A DNA stretch of 64,000 bases, taken from positions 62,001 to 126,000 of IMG/VR virus record IMGVR_UViG_3300046660_000488; one strand, 5' to 3'. The first letter of the stretch is position 1. Every line of letters starts with the position of its first letter. The position numbers and the translations under genes are program-made. Positions 25,027-48,155 of the stretch are shown here, one piece after another. The notes under the pieces were generated by a model. The model ran no database searches. It had not been told where the DNA came from and saw nothing but the letters and a program-made list of their open reading frames with translations.

Positions 25027-26289
<1,263 letters not shown>

Positions 26290-28815: not shown

Positions 28816-30762
28816 ATGAGCATTCCCCAGCTTGACGACGATGACATCGAGAAGCTTGACGACTTCCAGCACGCACGTCTTCGCACCGAAATGTGGTTGG
28901 GATCGCGAGACCCGAACACCCTGAACGTCCTCGAATACGAGGCCGGGAAGCCGAAGGCTGTTGAGACGACTTGGGTTCCGGCGGTCTTCACGGCCTTCCG
29001 TGAAATCCTCGACAACGCTCTGGACGAAATGATCACGCGCGGATACGGCGACCGGCTCGATGTGAGCTACGATCCCGCCACCGCGACCTTCATGATCAAG
29101 GACAACGGCCGGGGCATCCCGATCAATTTCAACGAGAAACACAAGCAGTACTCCGCCACGATGGCGATGACTGAGACCAAGGCTGGCCGAAACTTCAAGG
29201 ACCGTGGCAACTCGCGCGGCCTGAACGGCGTCGGCGGCTCGGTGGTGAACTTCTGCTCGGAATACCTGACCATCGACGTCATCCGCGACAAGAAGCATTT
29301 CAACCAGCGCTTCAACGAAGGCACGGGCGAAAAGCTGATTATCGAAGACCCGATCATCATGCCGACCGGTTCCAAGGACACGGGCACGAAGGTCAAGGTG
29401 AAGCTGTCGCACAAGGTCTTCCACGACCTGACCCTGCCGGAGAGCTTCATCAAGGCCCGCGTCTTCGAAGTGGCCCTGTGCTACCCGAAGCTGAAGGTCT
29501 ACTACAACGGCAAGCTCGTTTCGGCTGGCAAGCAAGGCGTCGAGAAGACCCTGTTCGGCGACCGCAAGCCGATCACCATCACCGTAGACGCGGTGACCAA
29601 CGTCAAGACCGGCACGATCCTGCCCGACAACACGCCGGAAGTGGTCCAGCGGCCGTTCCTGAGCAAGTTCTGGCTGGTCCCGGCCTTCTTCGAGTCGAGC
29701 GGCGAGCACACCCACAGCCTCGTCAACTGCATCCCCACGTTCCACGGCGGCAAGCACGTGGACACGTTCAAGCGCGGGTTCTTCGCTGGCATGCTCTCGG
29801 CTCTGGCCTCGAAGAGCAAGGCCAAGAAACTGAACCCGAACCGGTCGGACATGGAAGACGGGATGTTGATCTACAACATCACGGAAATGGACTCGCCCGC
29901 CTTCGACAGCCAGTCCAAGACGCGCCTGATCAACGAGGAAGTGGCGTCGGTGATCCGCAAGGCTCTCGACGACCCGGACTTCTTCAAGGGCGTGATCCGC
30001 CGCAATCCGGAGTGGGTCGATATGATCTACGCCCGTTGCGCGGAGCGGACCAAGAAAACCGACGACGCCGAAGCCAACAAGCTGGCCAAGAAGAACCTGC
30101 GGACCAAGGTCGCCGACCTTGAAGACGCATCCGGCGCCGACCGTTCCAAGTGCATCCTGTTCATCGCCGAAGGCAAGTCGGCCGTGGCGGGCATGGTCGA
30201 GGCGCGCAACGCCATGATCCACGGTGGCCTCCCGCTGCGCGGCAAGGTGCTTAACGTGTTCGAGGAGTCCACCAAGACCGTCCTCGAAAACAAGGCCCTA
30301 AGCTCGATCATGAAGGCCGTAGGCCTGATCCCCGGCCAGCGCGTGAACCGCCACCAGCTTCGCTACGGCAAGATTTACATCACCACGGACGCCGACGAGG
30401 ATGGGAAGAACATCGCAGCCCTGCTGATCAACTTCTTCTTCACGATGTGGCCGGAGTTGTTCGATCCCGAGAAACCGCCGTACGTCTATCTGTTCGACAC
30501 CCCGCTGATCGTCGCAGTCAAAGGCAAGACGCGGAAATACTGGTACAACGAGGACTACGACGACTTCAACCCGGAGCAGTACAAGGACTGGAAGCTCACC
30601 CGCGCCAAGGGTCTGGCCGCCCTGAAGAAGGACGACTGGAAGTGGGTACTTGAAAATCCGAAGGCTACACCCATCACTGACGATGGCGAACTGAAAGAGG
30701 CGATGAACCTCTTGTTCAATCCGAAACTCGCTGATAAGCGAAAGGAATGGATCGGGATGTGA
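28816..30762 (+). CDS. DNA topoisomerase II large subunit (T4 gp39+60 / GyrB-like)
   Basis: EILDNALDE, DNGRGIP, GLNGVG, TOPRIM AEGKSA, PLRGK, TTDADEDG, KGLAAL. Confidence 0.96.
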   Translation: MSIPQLDDDDIEKLDDFQHARLRTEMWLGSRDPNTLNVLEYEAGKPKAVETTWVPAVFTAFREILDNALDEMITRGYGDRLDVSYDPATATFMIKDNGRGIPINFNEKHKQYSATMAMTETKAGRNFKDRGNSRGLNGVGGSVVNFCSEYLTIDVIRDKKHFNQRFNEGTGEKLIIEDPIIMPTGSKDTGTKVKVKLSHKVFHDLTLPESFIKARVFEVALCYPKLKVYYNGKLVSAGKQGVEKTLFGDRKPITITVDAVTNVKTGTILPDNTPEVVQRPFLSKFWLVPAFFESSGEHTHSLVNCIPTFHGGKHVDTFKRGFFAGMLSALASKSKAKKLNPNRSDMEDGMLIYNITEMDSPAFDSQSKTRLINEEVASVIRKALDDPDFFKGVIRRNPEWVDMIYARCAERTKKTDDAEANKLAKKNLRTKVADLEDASGADRSKCILFIAEGKSAVAGMVEARNAMIHGGLPLRGKVLNVFEESTKTVLENKALSSIMKAVGLIPGQRVNRHQLRYGKIYITTDADEDGKNIAALLINFFFTMWPELFDPEKPPYVYLFDTPLIVAVKGKTRKYWYNEDYDDFNPEQYKDWKLTRAKGLAALKKDDWKWVLENPKATPITDDGELKEAMNLLFNPKLADKRKEWIGM

Positions 30763-30999: not shown

Positions 31000-31273
31000 C
31001 ACTCTTTATGTCATCTTCGGCCGTGGTGATTGACGGCCGCCCGAAACAGGTGCACGGCCCGTCGTATTCCCGCTCCAGACGCCCCCTGACGGCGTAGAGC
31101 ATGCTGATCTCCACCTCCCCATTCGGATAGACCTCGTAGGGCCTGTTGCACTCGCGGCAGGCCTCAGTTGTCTTGTCTCGAACAACAACGCTCGCGAAAT
31201 GGAGACAGTAGGGGCAATAGTGCTCCACTACCGTCTCTGCTTCCACGTGATAGTTGGCGGCCGGGTTTCTCAT
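30989..31273 (-). CDS. Zn-finger-like hypothetical protein
   Basis: CPYC...CREC. Confidence 0.6.
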   Translation of the reverse strand: MRNPAANYHVEAETVVEHYCPYCLHFASVVVRDKTTEACRECNRPYEVYPNGEVEISMLYAVRGRLEREYDGPCTCFGRPSITTAEDDIKSGRF

Positions 31274-32739
31274 AGCTTCAACTTCTTCAGTTCTTCGAGT
31301 TCAGTGTTGTATATATCCTTGCGGCGCGCTGGCTTGGCGAGAATATCCTTGTACTCTTTGATGTCGAGTTTCAGCTTCTCGATGATCGCGGTGACCTCCG
31401 CCTCGTATTCCTTGGTCCACCGGTAGGTGGGCAGGCTGACGACACGGCTCATCTGCGATTCGTCGAGCACGATCTTGGCCTTGCCGATGACCGTGGTGAC
31501 TTCCTCGACGACGCCTGCCCGGTTCGGGAACTTGCCCAGCTTCGAGGTGAAGCTGGTGTCCTTGAACAGGGCCTTCAGCGCGAGGTAGTAATTGAGTTCG
31601 TAGCTGGCGTCGTCGCGCATCTTCTCGTAGCGATTGACGTACCATTGCAGGCGCCACGCCACGAATTCCTTGACCACGTCTTCGGCCGACTCGTACTGCT
31701 TGATCCGTGTGCCGCCCCAGTCGATCACGACGATCCGTTCGGTGACCTTCTGGTGCAGCTTGAAGAACTCGACGGCGTCAGCGTCGGTCCACGCCTTGCG
31801 GGCCGGGACCTTGGTCTTGACGACCTTGCCTTCGATGGTCTCCGTTTTCACCGACGCAGGCTGAGCCGCCAGCGATCCGCGCAGCATCTTGATGGTGATC
31901 TTGATGCCGTCCGCCGACTCGTCGGTGAAGCCCTTGATCTCGCCGCTGTCTTCCATGGCGATCAGACGCTCTCGGAAATCCTCAAGCTCCATGCCCGGCG
32001 GCAGTTCGCTGATGTAGATCGTCGAAGTGTCGATGATCTTGGCCTTGCCGGTGTAGACCCACTGGTTGGGACCGACGTTCTTGACCGAAATGTCGTAGCG
32101 CTCATACGTCGGGATCAACTGCTTGACCGGACGGTCGTTCAGAGCGTCCTGCGTGGCCTGCACGAGGGCCTTGAACTGCCGGGGCAGGATGTTGGTGCTC
32201 CAACCCACCGCGACGCCCTTGACGCCGTTCAGGAGGACTACAGGGATCAGCGGCAGGAAGTGCTTGGGCTGGAGGTTCGAGCCGTCGTAATTCTCTTCCA
32301 GCGGGATCAGGTCGAGGTCGTTGTAGAAGAACGCCTGAGCGGCCTTGGAGCGGACGACCTCGGTGTAGCGCGGCGCGCCGATGCCTTCGACCGGCGCGAT
32401 GCGGCTACCGAACGCTCCCTCGCCCTGAATCAGGGGGACGTTGTTCTTGTAGGGGGCGGCCAGCAGGTTGATGGCGTTGTTCGCCGACGTCTCGCCGTGG
32501 ACGTACAGACGCTCGTAACCCATCAGCCCCGACAGGGCGAAGGTCTTCAGCTTCTCGGCACGGTTCCGCAGCAGCCACAGCGCCACGCGCTGGCCAAACT
32601 TCATGCCGTCTTCCACTGCCGGGATGGCGCGGGTTGAACAGACGTAGATGGCGTATGAGCGGCTGTCGCGGAGGATAAGCTTGCTCGAAGACAGCAAAAT
32701 GGCCTTCGAAGACAACGGTTTTGGTACTGACTTGGCCAT
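31270..32739 (-). CDS. DNA topoisomerase II medium subunit (T4 gp52 / GyrA-like)
   Basis: RAIP..EDGMK.GQR, YVHGETS, GAFGSR, APRYT catalytic Tyr, LLNG..GVAVG. Confidence 0.95.
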   Translation of the reverse strand: MAKSVPKPLSSKAILLSSSKLILRDSRSYAIYVCSTRAIPAVEDGMKFGQRVALWLLRNRAEKLKTFALSGLMGYERLYVHGETSANNAINLLAAPYKNNVPLIQGEGAFGSRIAPVEGIGAPRYTEVVRSKAAQAFFYNDLDLIPLEENYDGSNLQPKHFLPLIPVVLLNGVKGVAVGWSTNILPRQFKALVQATQDALNDRPVKQLIPTYERYDISVKNVGPNQWVYTGKAKIIDTSTIYISELPPGMELEDFRERLIAMEDSGEIKGFTDESADGIKITIKMLRGSLAAQPASVKTETIEGKVVKTKVPARKAWTDADAVEFFKLHQKVTERIVVIDWGGTRIKQYESAEDVVKEFVAWRLQWYVNRYEKMRDDASYELNYYLALKALFKDTSFTSKLGKFPNRAGVVEEVTTVIGKAKIVLDESQMSRVVSLPTYRWTKEYEAEVTAIIEKLKLDIKEYKDILAKPARRKDIYNTELEELKKLKL

Positions 32740-41465: not shown

Positions 41466-41543
41466 TGACGATACAGCTTCGGCTGCTCGGGCTTCGGCCC
41501 CCACGTTCGCTTGGTGGCGCCCTAGCAGGCGAACGTGGCCCAA
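41466..41543 (+). ncRNA. Small structured RNA with two cUUCGg tetraloop hairpins
   Basis: CAGC-TTCG-GCTG, GGGC-TTCG-GCCC, CCACGTTCGC/GCGAACGTGG; TTGACG promoter immediately upstream. Confidence 0.5.
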
Positions 41544-41565
41544 AGTCGTTGACGAAAATAATTGT

Positions 41566-41594
41566 TGACGAGAAATAGGCGCTGTGACTAAATA
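41566..41594 (+). promoter_or_regulatory. Composite TTGACG / TAAATA promoter of the tRNA operon
   Basis: TTGACG-N17-TAAATA. Confidence 0.65.
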
Positions 41595-41691
41595 GAATTA
41601 TCAGCGGTGAGTGCGCGGGACTTTCAGTTACCCCGGATCACCGAAACTCAATCGCCCCAAGGGGCACAGACGACAGAAAGGGAATAGTGTT

Positions 41692-41784
41692 ATGACCACG
41701 ATCATCAGTTCACACTCGTATTGCTATTCCTCCAGCTATCATTCGGGTAGCGGGTTGCTGTCGTGCGAGGATTTCACGGGCTAA
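41692..41784 (+). CDS. Attenuator leader peptide (30 aa) MTTIISSHSYCYSSSYHSGSGLLSCEDFTG
   Basis: RBS GAAAGGGA; codons 6-18 are only Ser/His/Tyr/Cys, matching the downstream tRNA set; not in ORF track. Confidence 0.85.
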   Translation: MTTIISSHSYCYSSSYHSGSGLLSCEDFTG

Positions 41785-41811
41785 GGTCCAAGTCGAAATC
41801 ACCAAGTGAAC

Positions 41812-41884
41812 GCAACCCCGAGCACCCACACAGGTCCGGGGTTTTTCTTTGCCCCGTCGCCTGAAAAGGTTCCGGGGTTTTTTA
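41812..41884 (+). terminator. Tandem intrinsic terminators (attenuator) upstream of the tRNA cluster
   Basis: AACCCCG/CGGGGTT+TTTCTTT (41814-41850) and GCCCCG/CGGGGT+TTTTT (41851-41884); GCAACCC(41812-41818) can alternatively pair with GGGTTGC (41752-41758). Confidence 0.85.
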
Positions 41885-41932
41885 TTGTCTGAAAGGGTTA
41901 ACGAATGAAGTAAACAAGTCGATGTACTTTGC

Positions 41933-42024
41933 GGAGCCGTGGTAGAGAGGCTTATTGCACCCGTTTCGAAAGCGGGAGTGGTCGTAAAAACCCACCGAGG
42001 GTTCGAATCCCTCCGGCTCCGCCA
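41933..42024 (+). tRNA. tRNA-Ser(CGA)
   Basis: CCCGT-TTCGAAA-GCGGG, long variable arm, GGTTCGAATCC, G73-CCA. Confidence 0.95.
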
Positions 42025-42053
42025 AGTACATCGAATATCTGAAGCTCCTTCGC

Positions 42054-42143
42054 GGAGGGCGGGCAGGCCGGTAATGCAGCGCACTGCTAATGCGTACAGC
42101 CCTTCAAACGGCTGAGAGGGTTCGATTCCCTCGCCTTCCGCAA
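42054..42143 (+). tRNA. tRNA-Ser(GCT)
   Basis: GCGCA-CTGCTAA-TGCGT, long variable arm; 3' end GCAA (CCA not encoded). Confidence 0.92.
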
Positions 42144-42155
42144 AGGAGCTTCAAT

Positions 42156-42247
42156 GGAGCCGTGGCCGAGTGGCTTAAGGCGCTCGCTTGGAAAGCGAGT
42201 GTGGTCGTAAAAACCCACCGTGAGTTCGAATCTCACCGGCTCCGCCA
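42156..42247 (+). tRNA. tRNA-Ser(GGA)
   Basis: CTCGC-TTGGAAA-GCGAG; acceptor stem and variable arm identical to Ser(CGA). Confidence 0.95.
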
Positions 42248-42251
42248 ACAT

Positions 42252-42338
42252 GTTGTGATGACCGAGTGGTCGAAGGTGCGGGATTGCAACCCCCGTAGCG
42301 TAAAGCTCACGTGGGTTCGAATCCCACTCACAACTCCA
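42252..42338 (+). tRNA. tRNA-Cys(GCA) with atypical long variable arm
   Basis: CGGGA-TTGCAAC-CCCCG, U73-CCA, variable hairpin AGC-GTAAA-GCT. Confidence 0.88.
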
Positions 42339-42362
42339 AATACGCTCCGTGGTCTGTCTTGT

Positions 42363-42446
42363 GGGCAGGTGGGTGAGTGGCTGAAACCGGAGGACTGTAA
42401 CCCCTCTCTGAAAGGCGCGCTGGTTCGAATCCAGCTCTGCCTACCA
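42363..42446 (+). tRNA. tRNA-Tyr(GTA)
   Basis: GAGGA-CTGTAAC-CCCTC, variable arm, A73-CCA. Confidence 0.92.
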
Positions 42447-42478
42447 GTCAGACCACGGAGCAAAATGTTCTTTCTCAT

Positions 42479-42563
42479 GCACAGGTGGTGTGAGTGGTTT
42501 AAGCCGGGAGACTGTAAATCTCCTCCGAAAGGGACGCTGGTTCGAATCCAGCCCTGTGCACCA
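42479..42563 (+). tRNA. tRNA-Tyr(GTA), second copy
   Basis: GGAGA-CTGTAAA-TCTCC, A73-CCA. Confidence 0.94.
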
Positions 42564-42610
42564 GAAAGAACATTTGAGCCAGTCTAGCGAAAGCAAAGCT
42601 GGTTCATTTT

Positions 42611-42686
42611 GCTAGTGTAGCTCAGTTGGTAGAGCGTCGGCTTGTGGAGTCGATTGTCGCGGGTTCGAGCCCCGCCGCTAGTTCCA
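42611..42686 (+). tRNA. tRNA-His(GTG) lacking G-1 (G1.U72, U73)
   Basis: TCGGC-TTGTGGA-GTCGA; base -1 is T. Confidence 0.9.
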
Positions 42687-42739
42687 TTTCAACCCGAGCA
42701 TCCGGCAATTGTGCCGGTGCTCACAACAGGAGAAATATC

Positions 42740-42970
42740 GTGCAAGTCCAGACCCACACGCAATGCGTTCTGCGTCGCGCTACGGGGTCCACTCAAGTCT
42801 CGTGGATTCCGACCAAATTCGCTCAGGAAGGTCGTGTTCTCGAACTTGATGAAGATGGCCGTGCAAACGGCTGGACTGTCGCGGAAGTCTGGGGCTTCAA
42901 CATGCCCTCCAAGATCGTCTTCGAGCGTGAACGCGATTTCAAGAACCACCGCAAGGCGACCGACGTATGA
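42740..42970 (+). CDS. Hypothetical protein
   Basis: AGGAG RBS, GTG start. Confidence 0.65.
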   Translation: MQVQTHTQCVLRRATGSTQVSWIPTKFAQEGRVLELDEDGRANGWTVAEVWGFNMPSKIVFERERDFKNHRKATDV

Positions 42971-43134
42971 GCAAGCCCGACAAGAAAAAGGCCAAGCTCC
43001 AATCGGCGATCACCGCGCTAGAGGCCAAGCTGCAACAGTCCCTCGGGAAGAAGGACTCGCGCACCGTTGAAATCGACGTCCCCGGCACTCTGCGTCAGAT
43101 TGCCGTCCTGAAGAAGCAATTGGAGGCCGTGTAA
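42967..43134 (+). CDS. Small basic coiled-coil protein (55 aa), not in ORF track
   Basis: ATGA and TAATG overlaps with both neighbours. Confidence 0.7.
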   Translation: MSKPDKKKAKLQSAITALEAKLQQSLGKKDSRTVEIDVPGTLRQIAVLKKQLEAV

Positions 43135-43412
43135 TGGCTGGCCGGATCGAAACGTATACGCACAGCGACAAGTCGGTTCCCAACAAGGGAGGCGCCATTG
43201 TCGCAGTCCGCTCGCAGACCGATTTCGCGGCCCGCACGGACGAGTTCATAGCCTTCGCCCAGAAGGTCGCCAAGATGTCGTTCGCGGCTCAGGCAACCAA
43301 CTGGGAGGACGTCACGGCCGCCTTCCCCGATTTGGAAGATGAGCGTGTCGCCCTGACGAAGGCGATCAAGGAAAAGGTCGAGATCGACCAGATCGTCATC
43401 CTGACGATCTAA
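43134..43412 (+). CDS. tsf: Minimal elongation factor Ts core subdomain (92 aa)
   Basis: GRIETYTH...GGAIVAVRSQTDFAARTDEFIAFAQKVA matches EF-Ts G.I.SYIH...GVLVEVNCETDFVARNEEF..LA; KEKVEI matches GENIKV. Confidence 0.8.
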   Translation: MAGRIETYTHSDKSVPNKGGAIVAVRSQTDFAARTDEFIAFAQKVAKMSFAAQATNWEDVTAAFPDLEDERVALTKAIKEKVEIDQIVILTI

Positions 43413-43416
43413 GAGG

Positions 43417-43524
43417 TCTGGGTTGACTGAGTGGTCATAAGGTTGATCGGATACTAGAGAGCGGAGGTGGGTGTACCGGCCCAACACCAAGGCTCACGTG
43501 GGTTCGAATCCCACACCCGGAACA
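43417..43524 (+). tRNA. Aberrant tRNA-like gene with intact acceptor/D/T arms and an expanded, unpaired anticodon region
   Basis: TCTGGGT/ACCCGGA acceptor; T arm GTGGGTTCGAATCCCAC identical to the Cys tRNA at 42252; no canonical anticodon stem. Confidence 0.6.
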
Positions 43525-43541
43525 TTTACGAGGACAAGGAC

Positions 43542-44160
43542 ATGTTGAGAGGCACGAGAATTCTGGAAGGCGACGAAGCCGTCGCCTACGCTAAGGTGAT
43601 CGACACGCTGCGGGTGTGTCTTCATTGAAGCTGGCTTCGAGGAAGTGATCCTTCCGGCGATCTGGGAACAGCAGACCTTCATTGATAAGGCTGGCCCCGA
43701 GATCGTCAACCAGATGTGGGCATTCAAGGACAAGGGCGACCGCCCTGTCTGCCTCATCCCCGAAGTCACCGGTCTCGTGCAAGAGACTTGGCGGGATACA
43801 TGGTCGAAGACGTGCAAGTCCAAGCGCATCTTCTACGTCTCCCGCTGCTACCGCTACGAACGCCCCCAAGCTGGGCGCTACCGTGAATTCACACAGTTCG
43901 GGGTAGAGTTGCTTGGGGACGTTCCCGGCGGGACCGAAGAGGTCAAAGGTCTGCTGATCGCCGTGCTCGACAAGCTCGGCCTCAGTTACCGGTTCAGCGA
44001 CGCGGTCAAGCGAGGCTTGACCTACTATGTCGAGGACGGCTTCGAGGTCGAATGTGAGAGCTTGGGCGCCCAGAAGCAGATCGCCGGTGGCGGTCGATAC
44101 GCGGAAGGGATCGGGTGGGCCATTGGTGTGGACCGCCTGCTGCTCGCGCTCTCGAAGTAG
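43542..44160 (+). CDS. hisS: Catalytic-domain-only histidyl-tRNA synthetase, made via +1 frameshift at 43620-43625 (205 aa)
   Basis: Frame-0 MLRGTR...TLRVCL joins frame+1 IEAGFEEVILP, gapless against HisRS motif 1; motif 2 RYERPQAGRYREFTQ; motif 3 GGGRY..GWAIGVDRL; no anticodon-binding domain. Confidence 0.88.
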
Positions 44161-44167
44161 TTTCTAT

Positions 44168-44243
44168 GGTGGTGGTAGTTCAGCGGTAGAACGCCAGACT
44201 GTGACTCTGGATGTCGCGGGTTCGATCCCCGTCCATCACCCCA
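44168..44243 (+). tRNA. tRNA-His(GTG) with canonical G-1:C73
   Basis: G-GTGGTGG/CCATCAC-C-CCA; CCAGA-CTGTGAC-TCTGG. Confidence 0.95.
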
Positions 44244-44337
44244 AATTCTGGTTGACCAAATACCCCGGCGGGTGTTAGGTTGGCCAATCGATCAACTCCT
44301 CACGCTTGTATTTCATTGCAGCAAGAGGAGAAGAAAG

Positions 44338-44589
44338 ATGCAAGTTTTCGTACTGACCGAGTCGCATCACATCGCGTACGAGGGAACGTGGACCGTAGTC
44401 CAAGGCGTCTATCTGACGCGGGATGAAGCCTTCGCGAAAGTGAAGGAACGCCTGCCAAAGGAAGCCGACCATGGGCAAGAAAAGTTCATGATCGTTCGGA
44501 GCCGTAGTGCAGACGAGCAGTGGTTCAGGCTACGTGAAATGACCGTGGGCGAGTACCAAGGTCGTGACGTTCTGTTCTATGAAGACTAA
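44338..44589 (+). CDS. Hypothetical protein
   Basis: GAGGAG RBS; start MQVFVL. Confidence 0.7.
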   Translation: MQVFVLTESHHIAYEGTWTVVQGVYLTRDEAFAKVKERLPKEADHGQEKFMIVRSRSADEQWFRLREMTVGEYQGRDVLFYED

Positions 44590-44641
44590 CGAGTGGGCGG
44601 GCTTCGGTCCGCCCATTCCACCCGCCGGACCGACGTGATAC

Positions 44642-44732
44642 GGAGGGTTGGCCGAGCGGTAAGGCTCTGGTCTTGAAAACCAGTGACAGGGTGACGAGCC
44701 CTGCGGGGGTTCGATCCCCTCACCCTCCGCCA
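44642..44732 (+). tRNA. tRNA-Ser(TGA)
   Basis: CTGGT-CTTGAAA-ACCAG, long variable arm, G73-CCA. Confidence 0.95.
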
Positions 44733-44926
44733 CGACGTTCTTCGCGCTTACGGCGCTTCCTACCCAGCATCGCCTTCATTTTATCCATGCCGGTCTCGAA
44801 CGCGGCCATGGCCTTGTTGGCGTCGTCCTCGCTCTCACCGCAAGACAGCGTCTCCCAAGCAAATGCGTCACCGGCGACGGACAGTACGGCCGATAGCTCG
44901 GCTTCGGTAAGTCGAATGCGTTCCAT
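44720..44926 (-). CDS. Small hypothetical protein
   Basis: Probable start MERIRL with GGAG RBS. Confidence 0.55.
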   Translation of the reverse strand: MERIRLTEAELSAVLSVAGDAFAWETLSCGESEDDANKAMAAFETGMDKMKAMLGRKRRKREERRGGG

Positions 44927-44994
44927 GAGGTGATCTCCTTCACCTTTACTAGGCCACGATTTCACCCTGATGTGCGCGGCACACCAAAATAAAT

Positions 44995-45699
44995 TCAGAT
45001 TTCGTCGCTATCCGGATCGAAGGTCTGGTTGAAGACCGACTTGATCTGCTGCGGATAGAACGCGATCCACCAGTCAGTCGGCTTGTACCCACGCGATCCG
45101 CCATCGGCCATGGTGTCGATCAGATGGATGCCGTCATAGCCCTCGCTGATCAGTTGCTGCTGGAACGCGGCGACGTCTTCGGTCTTGGATTTCACTCCGT
45201 CCGGCAGATGGTTCATGACGCGCGTCCAAGCATCGTTGGACAGCATTTCCTTCTGCTTGGCGTCGTAGGCCTTCCGGATGCGGTAGTAGTCGTTGTGGGG
45301 ATCGTTCTGGTCGAGGGTCTTGAGCTTTTGGGCCAGATCGCGAAGCTCTTCGAGGTCTTCGTCCCAGAGCCAATCGCCGCTCATCGCCAGCGGGCGCTTG
45401 ATCGACAGGAAGCACGGCTTGACGTTGGCGCCGGTCGCAGGCCCGGTCTCCGGGTGATAGCCCGCGAAATAGTTCGCCGTGTCCGGGCTGACGTCGAACC
45501 AGAACCCGAGGCGGTTGAAACCAGACCCGGCCGAGCCGAAGGCATGGTGCTTGAAGGTGGCGAAGTCTCGGAACGTGCCGTGGTAGCAGACCAGCGGCTG
45601 ACCTTGCTTGTCCACGACCTTAGAGCCCTTGAACCACGCTTGGAACGCAGGGTTCTCGGCGACGTTGGCTCGTTCCATGAGATTGATGTATTCGCGCAT
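44995..45699 (-). CDS. ADP-ribosyltransferase-like protein (ART-PolyVal type), late
   Basis: AFQAWFKGSKVVD..G.PLVCYHGT, GFWF, VKPCFLSIKRP, GYDGI, IAFYPQQIKS; TAAATA 5 nt upstream of ATG. Confidence 0.75.
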   Translation of the reverse strand: MREYINLMERANVAENPAFQAWFKGSKVVDKQGQPLVCYHGTFRDFATFKHHAFGSAGSGFNRLGFWFDVSPDTANYFAGYHPETGPATGANVKPCFLSIKRPLAMSGDWLWDEDLEELRDLAQKLKTLDQNDPHNDYYRIRKAYDAKQKEMLSNDAWTRVMNHLPDGVKSKTEDVAAFQQQLISEGYDGIHLIDTMADGGSRGYKPTDWWIAFYPQQIKSVFNQTFDPDSDEI

Positions 45700-47998: not shown

Positions 47999-48073
47999 TG
48001 GCGCCTTCAGCCGGGCTCGAACCGGCGACCTACAGATTTAGAGTCTGCTGCTCTACCGCTGAGCTATGAAGGC
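47999..48073 (-). tRNA. Amber suppressor tRNA (CTA), G73
   Basis: GCCTTCA/TGAAGGC, GCAGA-CTCTAAA-TCTGT, GGTTCGAGCC, CCA encoded. Confidence 0.92.
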
Positions 48074-48079
48074 GTCCTT

Positions 48080-48155
48080 TGGTGATCACAGTCGGGCTCG
48101 AACCGACGACCCGCAGATTTAGAGTCCGCTGCTCTACCAACTGAGCTATGCAATC
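48080..48155 (-). tRNA. Amber suppressor tRNA (CTA), A73
   Basis: GATTGCA/TGTGATC, GCGGA-CTCTAAA-TCTGC, CCA encoded; TTGACC promoter upstream. Confidence 0.92.

What the first reader, a model, noticed from the sequence alone, without database searches (positions are those of the whole stretch)
42611..44243. Two tRNA-His genes with opposite identity rules flank the mini-HisRS: a candidate orthogonal His-charging pair
Seen: tRNA-His at 44168-44243, 7 nt after the hisS stop, has canonical G-1:C73. tRNA-His at 42611-42686 has no G-1 (T at -1), a G1.U72 pair and U73. The HisRS ends right after motif 3, so it has no anticodon-binding domain. Established: G-1:C73 is the major identity element read by the HisRS catalytic domain. 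Caulobacterales/Rhizobiales/Rhodobacterales tRNA-His lack G-1 (U72, A73), and their HisRS depends on the anticodon. Inference: one tRNA suits the host-type enzyme and the other suits the phage mini-enzyme, which ignores the anticodon. That would let charging survive anticodon-loop damage or inhibition of the host HisRS.
Basis: partly seen in the sequence, partly recalled or inferred. Interest (0 to 1): 0.85.

Follow-up and report, generated by a model that had tools for sequence, protein, structure and literature searches.

The report
Frameshift-gated mini histidyl-tRNA synthetase module
A giant soil phage carries a stripped-down, histidine-free histidyl-tRNA synthetase whose gene can be read in full only if the ribosome slips one base forward at a histidine codon; it sits between a standard tRNA-His and one like its probable host's, so it looks like a self-regulating, host-independent histidine-charging kit.

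Summary
There are two tRNA-His(GUG) genes. One is canonical (G-1:C73) and lies 7 nt after the hisS stop. The other has U-1, G1·U72 and U73. The HisRS lacks the anticodon-binding domain.

- The enzyme also lacks the insertion domain, so it is only about 205 aa.
- The gene is split. Codons 1-27 are in frame 0 and the rest in frame +1.
- The protein contains no histidine.

The split is not an error. All 58 distinct split homologues (jumbo phages including Sinorhizobium phage Phosso, and Pseudomonas/Paraburkholderia replicons) have (C/G)UU-CAY in frame 0 at the junction. Most also have a Shine-Dalgarno-like motif 3 nt upstream, the layout of the prfB frameshift site with a His codon in place of UGA. 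Unsplit homologues are colinear with the shifted product.

Best reading: a programmed +1 frameshift that rises when His-tRNAHis is scarce, giving feedback-controlled synthesis of an emergency HisRS.

The orthogonal-pair idea gains comparative support. Five related phage genomes, including Phosso on S. meliloti, carry both tRNA-His types, and the enzyme keeps the motif-2 loop of G-1:C73-reading HisRS. No charging has been measured. The claim about surviving anticodon damage is speculation.

The parts
42611..42686 (+). tRNA-His(GUG) without G-1: U-1, G1.U72, U73, G37, encoded CCA (host-like, RRCH-type apart from U73, U3:A70 and an 8-nt D loop)
   Evidence: type definition from PMC3064791
43417..43522 (+). 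tRNA-like element (acceptor, D and T arms; 45-nt insert in place of the anticodon arm) 20 nt before the hisS start; possible processing signal or decayed class II tRNA
   Evidence: Rfam tRNA 27.9 bits, below the 29-bit gathering score; ARAGORN only with relaxed settings; a similar unrecognised element precedes hisS in L020
43542..43628 (+). mini-hisS, frame-0 part: 27 sense codons up to the slippery CUU, then the His sensor codon CAU and UGA
   Evidence: the N-terminal peptide is conserved at amino-acid level in all homologues
43612..43616 (+). weak Shine-Dalgarno-like GGGUG, 3 nt (UGU) before the slippery codon
   Evidence: -3.8 kcal/mol here; median -7.1 in split relatives against +0.4 in unsplit ones
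43620..43628 (+). frameshift site CUU CAU UGA: P-site CUU re-pairs with UUC (43621-43623) while the His codon 43623-43625 waits in the A site
   Evidence: (C/G)TT CA(T/C) in 58 of 58 distinct split homologues; in L025 the two frames overlap by only these two codons
43624..44160 (+). mini-hisS, +1-frame part (178 codons + TAG): motif 1 Pro, motif 2, HisA (KRGLxYY), GGGRY and motif 3; no His codon
44168..44243 (+). canonical tRNA-His(GUG): encoded G-1 paired with C73, G1:C72, A37, CCA; 7 nt after the hisS stop
   Evidence: same arrangement in L021 and L022, and about 45 nt downstream in L020

Best explanation
The locus encodes a minimal histidyl-tRNA synthetase of about 205 aa. It has the class II catalytic core only, with no insertion domain and no anticodon-binding domain. 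Its mRNA must be decoded with a programmed +1 ribosomal frameshift. The ribosome translates 27 codons in frame 0 and arrives with peptidyl-tRNA-Leu on CUU (43620-43622) and the His codon CAU in the A site. If His-tRNAHis arrives quickly, CAU is read and translation stops at the next codon (UGA), giving a useless 28-aa peptide. If His-tRNAHis is scarce, the P-site tRNA slips to UUC and the ribosome continues in the +1 frame to make the enzyme. Neither coding part contains histidine, so the enzyme can be made with no His-tRNAHis at all. Its product, His-tRNAHis, then shuts off its own synthesis. This is the logic of RF2 (prfB) autoregulation with a sense codon as the sensor. The enzyme most likely charges the canonical G-1:C73 tRNA-His encoded right behind it, reading the acceptor end only. 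In a host of the G-1-less alphaproteobacterial type, that enzyme-tRNA pair would be independent of the host HisRS. The second, host-like tRNA-His would be charged by the host enzyme. Shown: the anatomy, the conservation and the fold. Inferred: the frameshift event, its response to His-tRNAHis, and who charges what. My estimates: +1 ribosomal frameshift at this site 0.85; responds to His-tRNAHis supply 0.65; enzyme charges the G-1:C73 tRNA 0.65; pair is orthogonal to this phage's host 0.45.
For: Frameshift:
- The same split occurs at the same place in Phosso and in IMG/VR, metagenome and bacterial loci.
- 64 split loci give 57 distinct contexts plus L020. All need +1 and all have (C/G)TT CA(T/C).
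- The 0-frame stop follows at once or 1-12 codons later, so the conserved feature is the His codon, not the stop.
- CAT/CAC variation is silent in frame 0 but changes Ile to Thr in frame +1.
- In L025 a +1-frame TAG lies directly before TTC and a 0-frame TGA directly after CAC. This confines the shift to GUU-CAC.
- An SD-like motif with prfB spacing is enriched in split genes (prfB features from PMC10798248; hungry-codon effect from PMC2377451).
- Unsplit homologues of 205-215 aa are colinear with the shifted product, and the slippery Leu aligns with a conserved Leu.
- In an AF2 model of an unsplit homologue the junction lies inside helix 10-29 (pLDDT about 97). The +1 ORF alone would therefore lack an integral helix.
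- There is no indel at the site in four independent assemblies.

His-free design:
- 55 of 60 distinct split proteins have zero His (0.05%). Full-size HisRS have 1.26%.
- The N-terminal part is His-free in 63 of 64.

Real enzyme:
- Motif-2, HisA, GGGRY and motif-3 residues are invariant.
- The AF2 model has pLDDT 93.5, and the top Foldseek hits are HisRS catalytic domains with TM 0.83-0.88.
- The hisS profile scores above hisZ.

tRNA link and orthogonality; PMC3064791; PMC3875453.
Against: - No expression, proteomic or charging data exist.
- The window's own SD-like motif is weak (-3.8 kcal/mol).
- Conservation of CAY partly reflects shared descent. The tree needs only 2-7 changes of state.
- The sensor would read total His-tRNAHis, including host tRNA charged by the host enzyme.
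- The enzyme lacks the insertion domain that clamps the acceptor stem in the T. thermophilus complex.
- By my count of the alignment, it has Gln where TtHisRS has Glu64, which is reported as essential for aminoacylation (PMC4357726).
- The host of this phage is unknown.
- tRNA #1 is not a perfect host-type tRNA-His (U73, U3:A70, no U20a).
- Chromosomal and plasmid copies in Pseudomonas, Paraburkholderia and Burkholderia have no tRNA nearby. The enzyme's role is therefore not tied to a private tRNA.
Confidence: 0.6

Rival explanations
1. The split is real and is decoded by +1 frameshifting, but it only sets a fixed low expression level. The His codon is just a moderately slow codon kept by descent, and there is no feedback from His-tRNAHis.
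For: P-site slippage is held to dominate +1 frameshifting, with the A-site effect about 2-fold in one model (PMC2377451). The split state may have arisen only a few times.
Against: All 58 distinct contexts keep CAY although flanking codons, the stop position and the third base of the His codon itself vary. The protein is almost free of His, which is hard to explain without a link to His-tRNAHis shortage. The sensor codon is cognate to the enzyme's own product.
Confidence: 0.2
2. The protein is not a tRNA-charging enzyme. It is a HisRS-derived regulator or histidine-activating protein (HisZ-like, or a His-AMP donor for another acceptor). RefSeq labels the bacterial copies 'ATP phosphoribosyltransferase regulatory subunit'.
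For: It lacks two of the three HisRS domains. The Glu64 equivalent is Gln. Bacterial copies sit among unrelated genes such as GNAT, metallophosphoesterase and hydrolases, without tRNAs. The HisZ annotation is seen.
Against: The hisS profile scores far above hisZ (130.8 against 72.8 bits). The catalytic arginines and the residues that hold C74 and A76 in the T. thermophilus complex (Glu114, Arg115, Arg120, Arg122 equivalents) are invariant. No hisG is adjacent. In phages the gene lies inside tRNA arrays, with tRNA-His next to it. Engineered HisRS core fragments activate histidine (PMC3060492).
Confidence: 0.15
3. The two tRNA-His types reflect a host range or history spanning hosts of both kinds, each tRNA being charged by whichever host HisRS fits. 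The mini-HisRS merely adds capacity and there is no orthogonality.
For: Mini-HisRS also occurs in phages that have only canonical tRNA-His and in bacteria with canonical systems.
Against: Phosso, isolated on S. meliloti (a G-1-less clade), keeps a G-1:C73 tRNA-His 225 nt before the mini-hisS start and a host-type one elsewhere. In such a host the canonical tRNA should be a very poor substrate of the host enzyme (PMC3064791, PMC3875453), so it would be useless without the phage enzyme.
Confidence: 0.2
4. The gene is a pseudogene, or the split is an assembly or sequencing error.
For: A single-base frame change is the commonest artefact, and annotators treated the +1 ORF as the whole gene.
Against: The same split is present in more than 50 independent assemblies, including a cultured phage and finished bacterial replicons. 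Four independent metagenomes of near-identical phages show it without indels. Both parts are under strong amino-acid conservation.
Confidence: 0.02

Closest known systems
prfB (release factor 2) autoregulatory +1 programmed frameshift
   Same: A short frame-0 ORF; a slippery CUU in the P site re-pairing one base downstream; an internal Shine-Dalgarno 3 nt upstream; the A-site codon is decoded by the product of the gene's own activity, which gives negative feedback (PMC10798248).
   Different: The A-site codon is a sense codon (His, CAY) instead of UGA. GUU also serves as the slippery codon. The re-pairing codon is UUC, not UUU. The gene product acts indirectly, by making the aminoacyl-tRNA that reads the sensor. 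It has not been shown experimentally.
E. coli HisRS/tRNAHis used as an engineered orthogonal pair in Caulobacter crescentus (Yuan 2011, PMC3064791; Ko 2013, PMC3875453)
   Same: A G-1:C73 tRNA-His plus a G-1-reading HisRS working beside a host system that uses a G-1-less, U72/A73, anticodon-dependent tRNA-His.
   Different: Here the pair is natural and phage-borne, and the enzyme is half the size with no anticodon-binding or insertion domain. Orthogonality is inferred, not measured.
HisRS catalytic-core fragments ('urzymes', 119-145 aa; PMC3060492)
   Same: The HisRS active site is reduced to motifs 1-3 without the insertion and anticodon-binding domains.
   Different: Those are laboratory constructs assayed for histidine activation. 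This is a natural, widespread, strongly conserved family of about 205 aa.
HisZ (HisRS paralogue, regulatory subunit of ATP phosphoribosyltransferase)
   Same: A HisRS-derived protein without an anticodon-binding domain. The bacterial copies carry this automatic label.
   Different: HisZ is 300-390 aa, has no adenylation activity (PMC9437257) and works with HisG. The mini-HisRS keeps the catalytic residues, scores higher on the hisS profile and has no hisG neighbour.
His-codon sensing in the his operon leader, and T-box control of hisS (my own knowledge, not checked here)
   Same: Expression of histidine-supply genes is coupled to the charging level of tRNA-His.
   Different: Those act on transcription termination through RNA structures. 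Here the output would be a change of reading frame at a single His codon.
Aminoacyl-tRNA synthetases of huge phages (Al-Shayeb 2020, PMC7162821)
   Same: Jumbo phages of 400-640 kb with large tRNA sets and aaRS genes. Two genomes of that size class match (LR745206, LR756502).
   Different: That paper does not mention histidyl enzymes, a frameshift or tRNA identity.

Membership tests
Histidyl-tRNA synthetase (class IIa; TIGR00442/PF13393) | Class II catalytic core with motifs 1, 2 and 3 and the HisRS-specific HisA (RGLxYY) and GGGRY motifs | tested here: met
   AF2 model pLDDT 93.5 with top structural hits to HisRS catalytic domains
Histidyl-tRNA synthetase (class IIa; TIGR00442/PF13393) | Insertion domain between motifs 2 and 3 | tested here: not met
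   T. thermophilus residues about 157-242 have no counterpart; the insertion domain is 172-228 (PMC4357726)
Histidyl-tRNA synthetase (class IIa; TIGR00442/PF13393) | C-terminal anticodon-binding domain | tested here: not met
   the protein ends about 10 residues after motif 3; the hisS profile score of 130.8 is below the 286.75 cut-off
Histidyl-tRNA synthetase (class IIa; TIGR00442/PF13393) | Histidylation of tRNA-His | not testable with these tools
   needs an aminoacylation assay
HisZ | Loss of the adenylation function and partnership with hisG | tested here: not met
   motif-2 and motif-3 arginines are invariant; the hisZ profile scores lower than hisS; no hisG next to the phage or bacterial copies examined
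prfB-type +1 programmed frameshift cassette | Two overlapping ORFs, with the second in the +1 frame and encoding most of the protein | tested here: met
prfB-type +1 programmed frameshift cassette | Slippery P-site codon that can re-pair one base downstream (CUU-U in prfB) | tested here: met
   CUU-C or GUU-C in 58 of 58 distinct contexts
prfB-type +1 programmed frameshift cassette | Shine-Dalgarno-like motif 3 nt upstream of the slippery codon | tested here: inconclusive
   strong in most relatives (median -7.1 kcal/mol) but weak in the window (-3.8) and absent in L036 and L037
prfB-type +1 programmed frameshift cassette | In-frame UGA as the slowly decoded A-site codon | tested here: not met
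   the A-site codon is CAY (His); UGA/UAA follows directly in only about half of the cases
prfB-type +1 programmed frameshift cassette | Frameshifting observed and responsive to the gene product | not testable with these tools
   needs reporter assays or proteomics
G-1-less tRNA-His of the RRCH alphaproteobacteria | No encoded G-1; G1.U72 | tested here: met
   tRNA #1: T at -1, G1.U72; definition from PMC3064791
G-1-less tRNA-His of the RRCH alphaproteobacteria | A73, C3:G70, 9-nt D loop with U20a | tested here: not met
   the window has U73, U3:A70 and an 8-nt D loop; relatives L020, L021, L023, L031 and Phosso have A73; A73C costs C. crescentus HisRS only 3-fold (PMC3064791)
Canonical bacterial tRNA-His | Encoded G-1 opposite C73, G1:C72, GUG anticodon | tested here: met
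   tRNA #2

The most novel reading that the evidence does not exclude
This would be the first natural case of an aminoacyl-tRNA synthetase whose synthesis is gated by a programmed +1 frameshift at its own cognate 'hungry' codon. The enzyme is a histidine-free, core-only emergency HisRS found in dozens of jumbo phages and in Pseudomonas/Paraburkholderia replicons. In phages of G-1-less alphaproteobacteria it forms, with a co-encoded G-1:C73 tRNA-His, a natural orthogonal charging pair.
Probability: 0.5. Interest if true: 0.92.

Novelty: new variant of a known kind. Interest (0 to 1): 0.86.

Why it matters
If the frameshift reads His-tRNAHis supply, this adds a new principle of aaRS regulation: a sense-codon analogue of RF2 autoregulation. 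It would also be a natural example of hungry-codon frameshifting put to regulatory use, which the 2016 recoding review leaves as an open question (PMC5009743).

A natural 205-aa HisRS would be the smallest working class II synthetase core known to me. It bears on the 'urzyme' models of synthetase origins.

A phage-borne HisRS/tRNA-His pair that bypasses the host's divergent identity rules would show phages carrying private decoding channels. It would also provide compact parts for genetic-code engineering.

The system is testable now. Phosso grows on S. meliloti, and the bacterial copies are in culturable Pseudomonas and Paraburkholderia. Databases currently mis-annotate the gene as a truncated ORF, as 'HisZ', or with a wrong start.

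Tried and rejected
- Sequencing error or pseudogene: rejected.
- Internal initiation of the +1 ORF: rejected. The window has no start codon in the +1 frame before GTG 43645, which lies after the conserved FIEAGFEE segment. The codon overlapping the stop is ATT, ACT or ATC in different relatives. The Phosso ATG used by its annotators is not conserved.
- Transcriptional slippage on the G run: rejected. The window and many relatives have no run. In L025 a +1-frame TAG lies between the G run and the junction.
- Quadruplet decoding by a special tRNA-His: rejected. Both tRNA-His have 7-nt anticodon loops, the fourth base varies, and the bacterial copies have no tRNA nearby.
- TAG recoding by the two tRNA(CUA): no sign of it. 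TAG ends 20 of 73 crude gene calls, and code 11 already gives 88% coverage.
- Finding the host through tRNA #1: the search of the phage collection gave only generic tRNA matches.
- Promoter and terminator scan of 41500-45200: nothing on the + strand. This is weakly consistent with one transcription unit.
- Read evidence: read laying gave assembler contigs only, so there is no RNA evidence and no read-level heterogeneity.
I rebuilt the alignment without that row.
- Literature: searches for a frameshift in hisS or for Phosso found nothing relevant. The library is incomplete, so prior description cannot be excluded.
Full report
**1. The observation**

ARAGORN finds 14 tRNA genes in the window. 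Among them are tRNA-His(GTG) at 42611-42686 and 44169-44243, and Rfam's tRNA model scores both well (64.5 and 66.5 bits).

Reading the sequence gives the following.
- The first tRNA has T at -1, an acceptor stem GCTAGTG/CGCTAGT (G1·U72), U73 and an encoded CCA.
- The second has G at -1 (44168) opposite C73, G1:C72 and CCA. It begins 7 nt after the TAG stop of the HisRS-like gene.
- That gene matches Pfam tRNA-synt_His (5e-16) and ends about ten residues after motif 3.

**2.

*The enzyme is smaller than described.* It aligns to T. thermophilus HisRS residues 33-156 and 243-316 of 421. It therefore lacks both the anticodon-binding domain (331-421) and the insertion domain (172-228; PMC4357726).

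*The gene is in two frames.*
- The HisRS-type N-terminus (MLRGTR...) starts at ATG 43542 and runs in frame 0 to TGA 43626-43628.
- The rest of the protein (…IEAGFEEVILP…, motifs 1-3) is in the +1 frame. That frame is closed by a TGA at 43597 and has no start codon before GTG 43645.
- A +1 shift on CTT (43620-43622) gives a 205-aa product.

**3. The split is conserved**

Sinorhizobium phage Phosso (469 kb, host S. meliloti) is the only cultured phage with this gene. It has the same split at the same place, although its annotators started the CDS at an internal ATG in the +1 frame.

I collected mini-HisRS loci from several sources:
- jumbo-phage contigs, mostly 400-600 kb;
- metagenomes;
- bacterial assemblies, including Pseudomonas fragi and P. 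cerasi, Paraburkholderia species, Thalassospira, Azospirillum and myxobacterial MAGs.

Of the loci that could be classified, 64 are split and about 40 are single ORFs.

Features of the split loci:
- All need a +1 shift.
- All 57 distinct contexts, plus L020, have (C/G)TT CA(T/C) in frame 0 at the junction.
- The frame-0 stop follows the His codon directly in about half. In the rest it comes 1-12 codons later.
- The codon before the slippery one varies freely.
- CAT and CAC alternate. This change is silent in frame 0 but switches Ile and Thr in frame +1.
- In L025 the +1 frame is closed by TAG immediately before TTC, and frame 0 by TGA immediately after CAC. The shift there can only happen with GUU in the P site and CAC in the A site.

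Single-ORF homologues (205-215 aa) are colinear with the shifted product, and the slippery Leu aligns with a conserved Leu.

An AF2 model of such a homologue (pLDDT 91.6) puts the junction inside helix 10-29, which has pLDDT about 97. The +1 ORF alone would therefore lack an integral helix.

Near-identical phages in four metagenome assemblies from at least three studies show substitutions but no indel at 43611-43628.

On a tree of 63 distinct proteins the split state is clustered. It needs between 2 and 7 changes and spans pairs only about 48% identical.

**4. The site looks like the prfB frameshift cassette**

In prfB, peptidyl-tRNA-Leu slips from CUU to UUU while UGA waits in the A site, helped by a Shine-Dalgarno sequence 3 nt upstream. 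RF2 itself competes with the slip (PMC10798248).

Here most split genes carry (C/A)GG(A/G)GG, then 3 nt, then NUU. The predicted pairing to the anti-SD has a median of -7.1 kcal/mol, against +0.4 at the aligned place of unsplit genes (Mann-Whitney p about 1e-7, not corrected for relatedness). The window's own motif is weak (GGGUG, -3.8).

A slippery P site, an upstream SD and a 'hungry' A-site codon are the accepted stimulators of +1 frameshifting (PMC2377451). The new element is that the A-site codon is a sense codon cognate to the enzyme being made.

**5. The protein is almost free of histidine**

| Set | His content | Source |
|---|---|---|
| Distinct split proteins, +1-frame part | 55 of 60 have none (0.05% overall) | |
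| Split genes, frame-0 part between the RGT motif and the junction | 63 of 64 have none | |
| Unsplit relatives | 0.35% | |
| 35 full-size HisRS fetched in the same scan | 1.26% | |
| Crude long ORFs of the window | 2.8% | |

In the productive path the ribosome never needs His-tRNAHis. The only His codon it meets is the one whose decoding aborts synthesis.

This fits a design for expression when His-tRNAHis is lacking, with feedback once it is restored. It is my main reason for preferring a sensor over a fixed-ratio frameshift.

**6. Is it an enzyme?**
- The motif-2 arginine and the loop ERPQxGRYRxF, HisA (KRGLxYY), GGGRY and motif 3 are invariant in 63 sequences.
- These include the equivalents of T. 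thermophilus Glu114, Arg115, Arg120 and Arg122, which hold the acceptor end, C74 and A76 (PMC4357726; alignment).
- The window's +1 part folds with pLDDT 93.5. Its best structural matches are HisRS catalytic domains (5e3i, 2el9, 1kmm, 1adj and the tRNA complex 4rdx; TM 0.83-0.88).
- The hisS profile scores 130.8 bits against 72.8 for hisZ.

Points against:
- The clamp formed by the insertion domain is missing.
- By my count of the alignment, the Glu64 equivalent is Gln. Glu64 is reported as essential in TtHisRS.
- RefSeq labels the Burkholderia and Paraburkholderia copies 'ATP phosphoribosyltransferase regulatory subunit', but no hisG is nearby.

**7. The two tRNA-His**

A G-1:C73 tRNA-His lies within 3 kb of the mini-hisS in many phage loci. 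In the window, L021 and L022 it lies directly behind the gene.

The window, L020, L021 and L023 also carry, within 3 kb, a tRNA-His with U-1, G1·U72 and G37. It has A73 in the relatives and U73 in the window. Phosso has the G-1:C73 type 225 nt before the hisS start, and a U-1/G1·U72/C3:G70/A73/G37 type at 429192-429265.

The second form is the derived tRNA-His of the Rhizobiales-Rhodobacterales-Caulobacterales clade (PMC3064791, PMC3937112), to which Phosso's host belongs. Relevant published results:
- C. crescentus HisRS depends on the anticodon and U72.
- It loses only 3-fold with A73C.
- It charges E. coli tRNAHis more than 250-fold worse (PMC3064791).
- The E. coli HisRS/tRNAHis pair works and is orthogonal in Caulobacter (PMC3875453).
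- HisRS of that clade replaced a motif-2-loop Gln that contacts G-1:C73 by Gly (PMC3937112, Fig. S1 legend). The mini-HisRS has an invariant Gln in ERPQ. The residue mapping is my inference.

Caveats:
- The window comes from a rhizosphere sample and its host is unknown.
- tRNA #1 lacks A73, C3:G70 and the 9-nt D loop.
- Many carriers of the enzyme have only canonical tRNA-His.
- The Pseudomonas and Paraburkholderia copies sit in ordinary chromosomal or megaplasmid contexts without tRNAs.

The enzyme is therefore a general stand-by HisRS. Orthogonality would be a consequence in G-1-less hosts, not its reason for existing.

**8. Known or new?**

Synthetases in huge phages are known (PMC7162821), but that paper does not mention histidyl enzymes. 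The large 2016 review of recoding has no case involving a tRNA synthetase or a His codon in the part held, and it treats natural use of hungry-codon frameshifting as an open question. Searches for a hisS frameshift or for Phosso gave nothing.

I rate this as a new variant of a known kind: RF2-type autoregulatory +1 frameshifting transferred to an aaRS. It comes together with a new minimal HisRS subfamily and a probable natural orthogonal pair.

**9. Verdict**
- The main finding is the conserved His-codon frameshift in a His-free mini-HisRS.

Everything about mechanism remains inference until the junction peptide, reporter responses and charging assays are done. All are ordinary experiments in available strains.

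Noticed in passing
window 42252-42338 (+): A tRNA with anticodon GCA (Cys) but a class II body: 84-87 nt with a long variable arm, sitting in a run of tRNA-Ser and tRNA-Tyr genes (Rfam 52 bits, with a mismatch in the anticodon stem). It could be a Ser- or Tyr-type tRNA with a changed anticodon, which raises the question of which amino acid it carries.
   Followed up: no
window 43417-43522 (+): A tRNA-like element 20 nt before the hisS start. It has good acceptor, D and T arms but a 45-nt insert where the anticodon arm should be (27.9 bits, just under Rfam's threshold). L020 has a comparable unrecognised element in the same place.
   Followed up: partly
window 47999-48155 (-): Two tandem tRNAs with anticodon CUA (amber suppressors, called 'Pyl' by ARAGORN; 72 and 63 bits). 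Phosso also has one (record 446731-446806). TAG is still used as a stop in about a quarter of crude gene calls, so the genome is not wholly recoded.
   Followed up: partly
L076-L083, L087 (Pseudomonas, Paraburkholderia); L233 (Burkholderia sp. PAMC 26561 plasmid): Chromosomal or megaplasmid copies of the split mini-hisS nest inside the phage clade on a long branch. Their neighbours are unrelated to phages (TauD, GNAT, metallophosphoesterase, T6SS IcmF; hydrolases, an IS4 element). RefSeq annotates the copy as HisZ starting in the +1 frame.
   Followed up: partly
L082 (Pararhizobium sp. BT-229, 1.6-Mb contig): An unsplit mini-HisRS lies among 11 tRNA genes. Two of these are tRNA-His without G-1: one has G1.U72 with G73, the other G1:C72 with A73. 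It looks like a phage-derived tRNA island in a rhizobial replicon.
   Followed up: no
L016 = L045 (IMGVR_UViG_3300036766_000988): This homologue has an intact N-terminal junction but a different frame break about 40 codons into the conserved core. It may be a genuine pseudogene or an assembly error.
   Followed up: no
window 42967-43134 (+): A small ORF (55 aa, ...KKDSRTVEIDVPGTLRQIAVLKKQLEAV) upstream of hisS has a recognisable counterpart directly upstream of hisS in L022. Its function is unknown.
   Followed up: no
window 25027-26289 (-), 28816-30762 (+), 31270-32739 (-): A ClpX-like ATPase and the two subunits of a type II topoisomerase (GyrB/ParE-like and GyrA/ParC-like). This fits a jumbo phage; the source contig is 578 kb.
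   Followed up: partly
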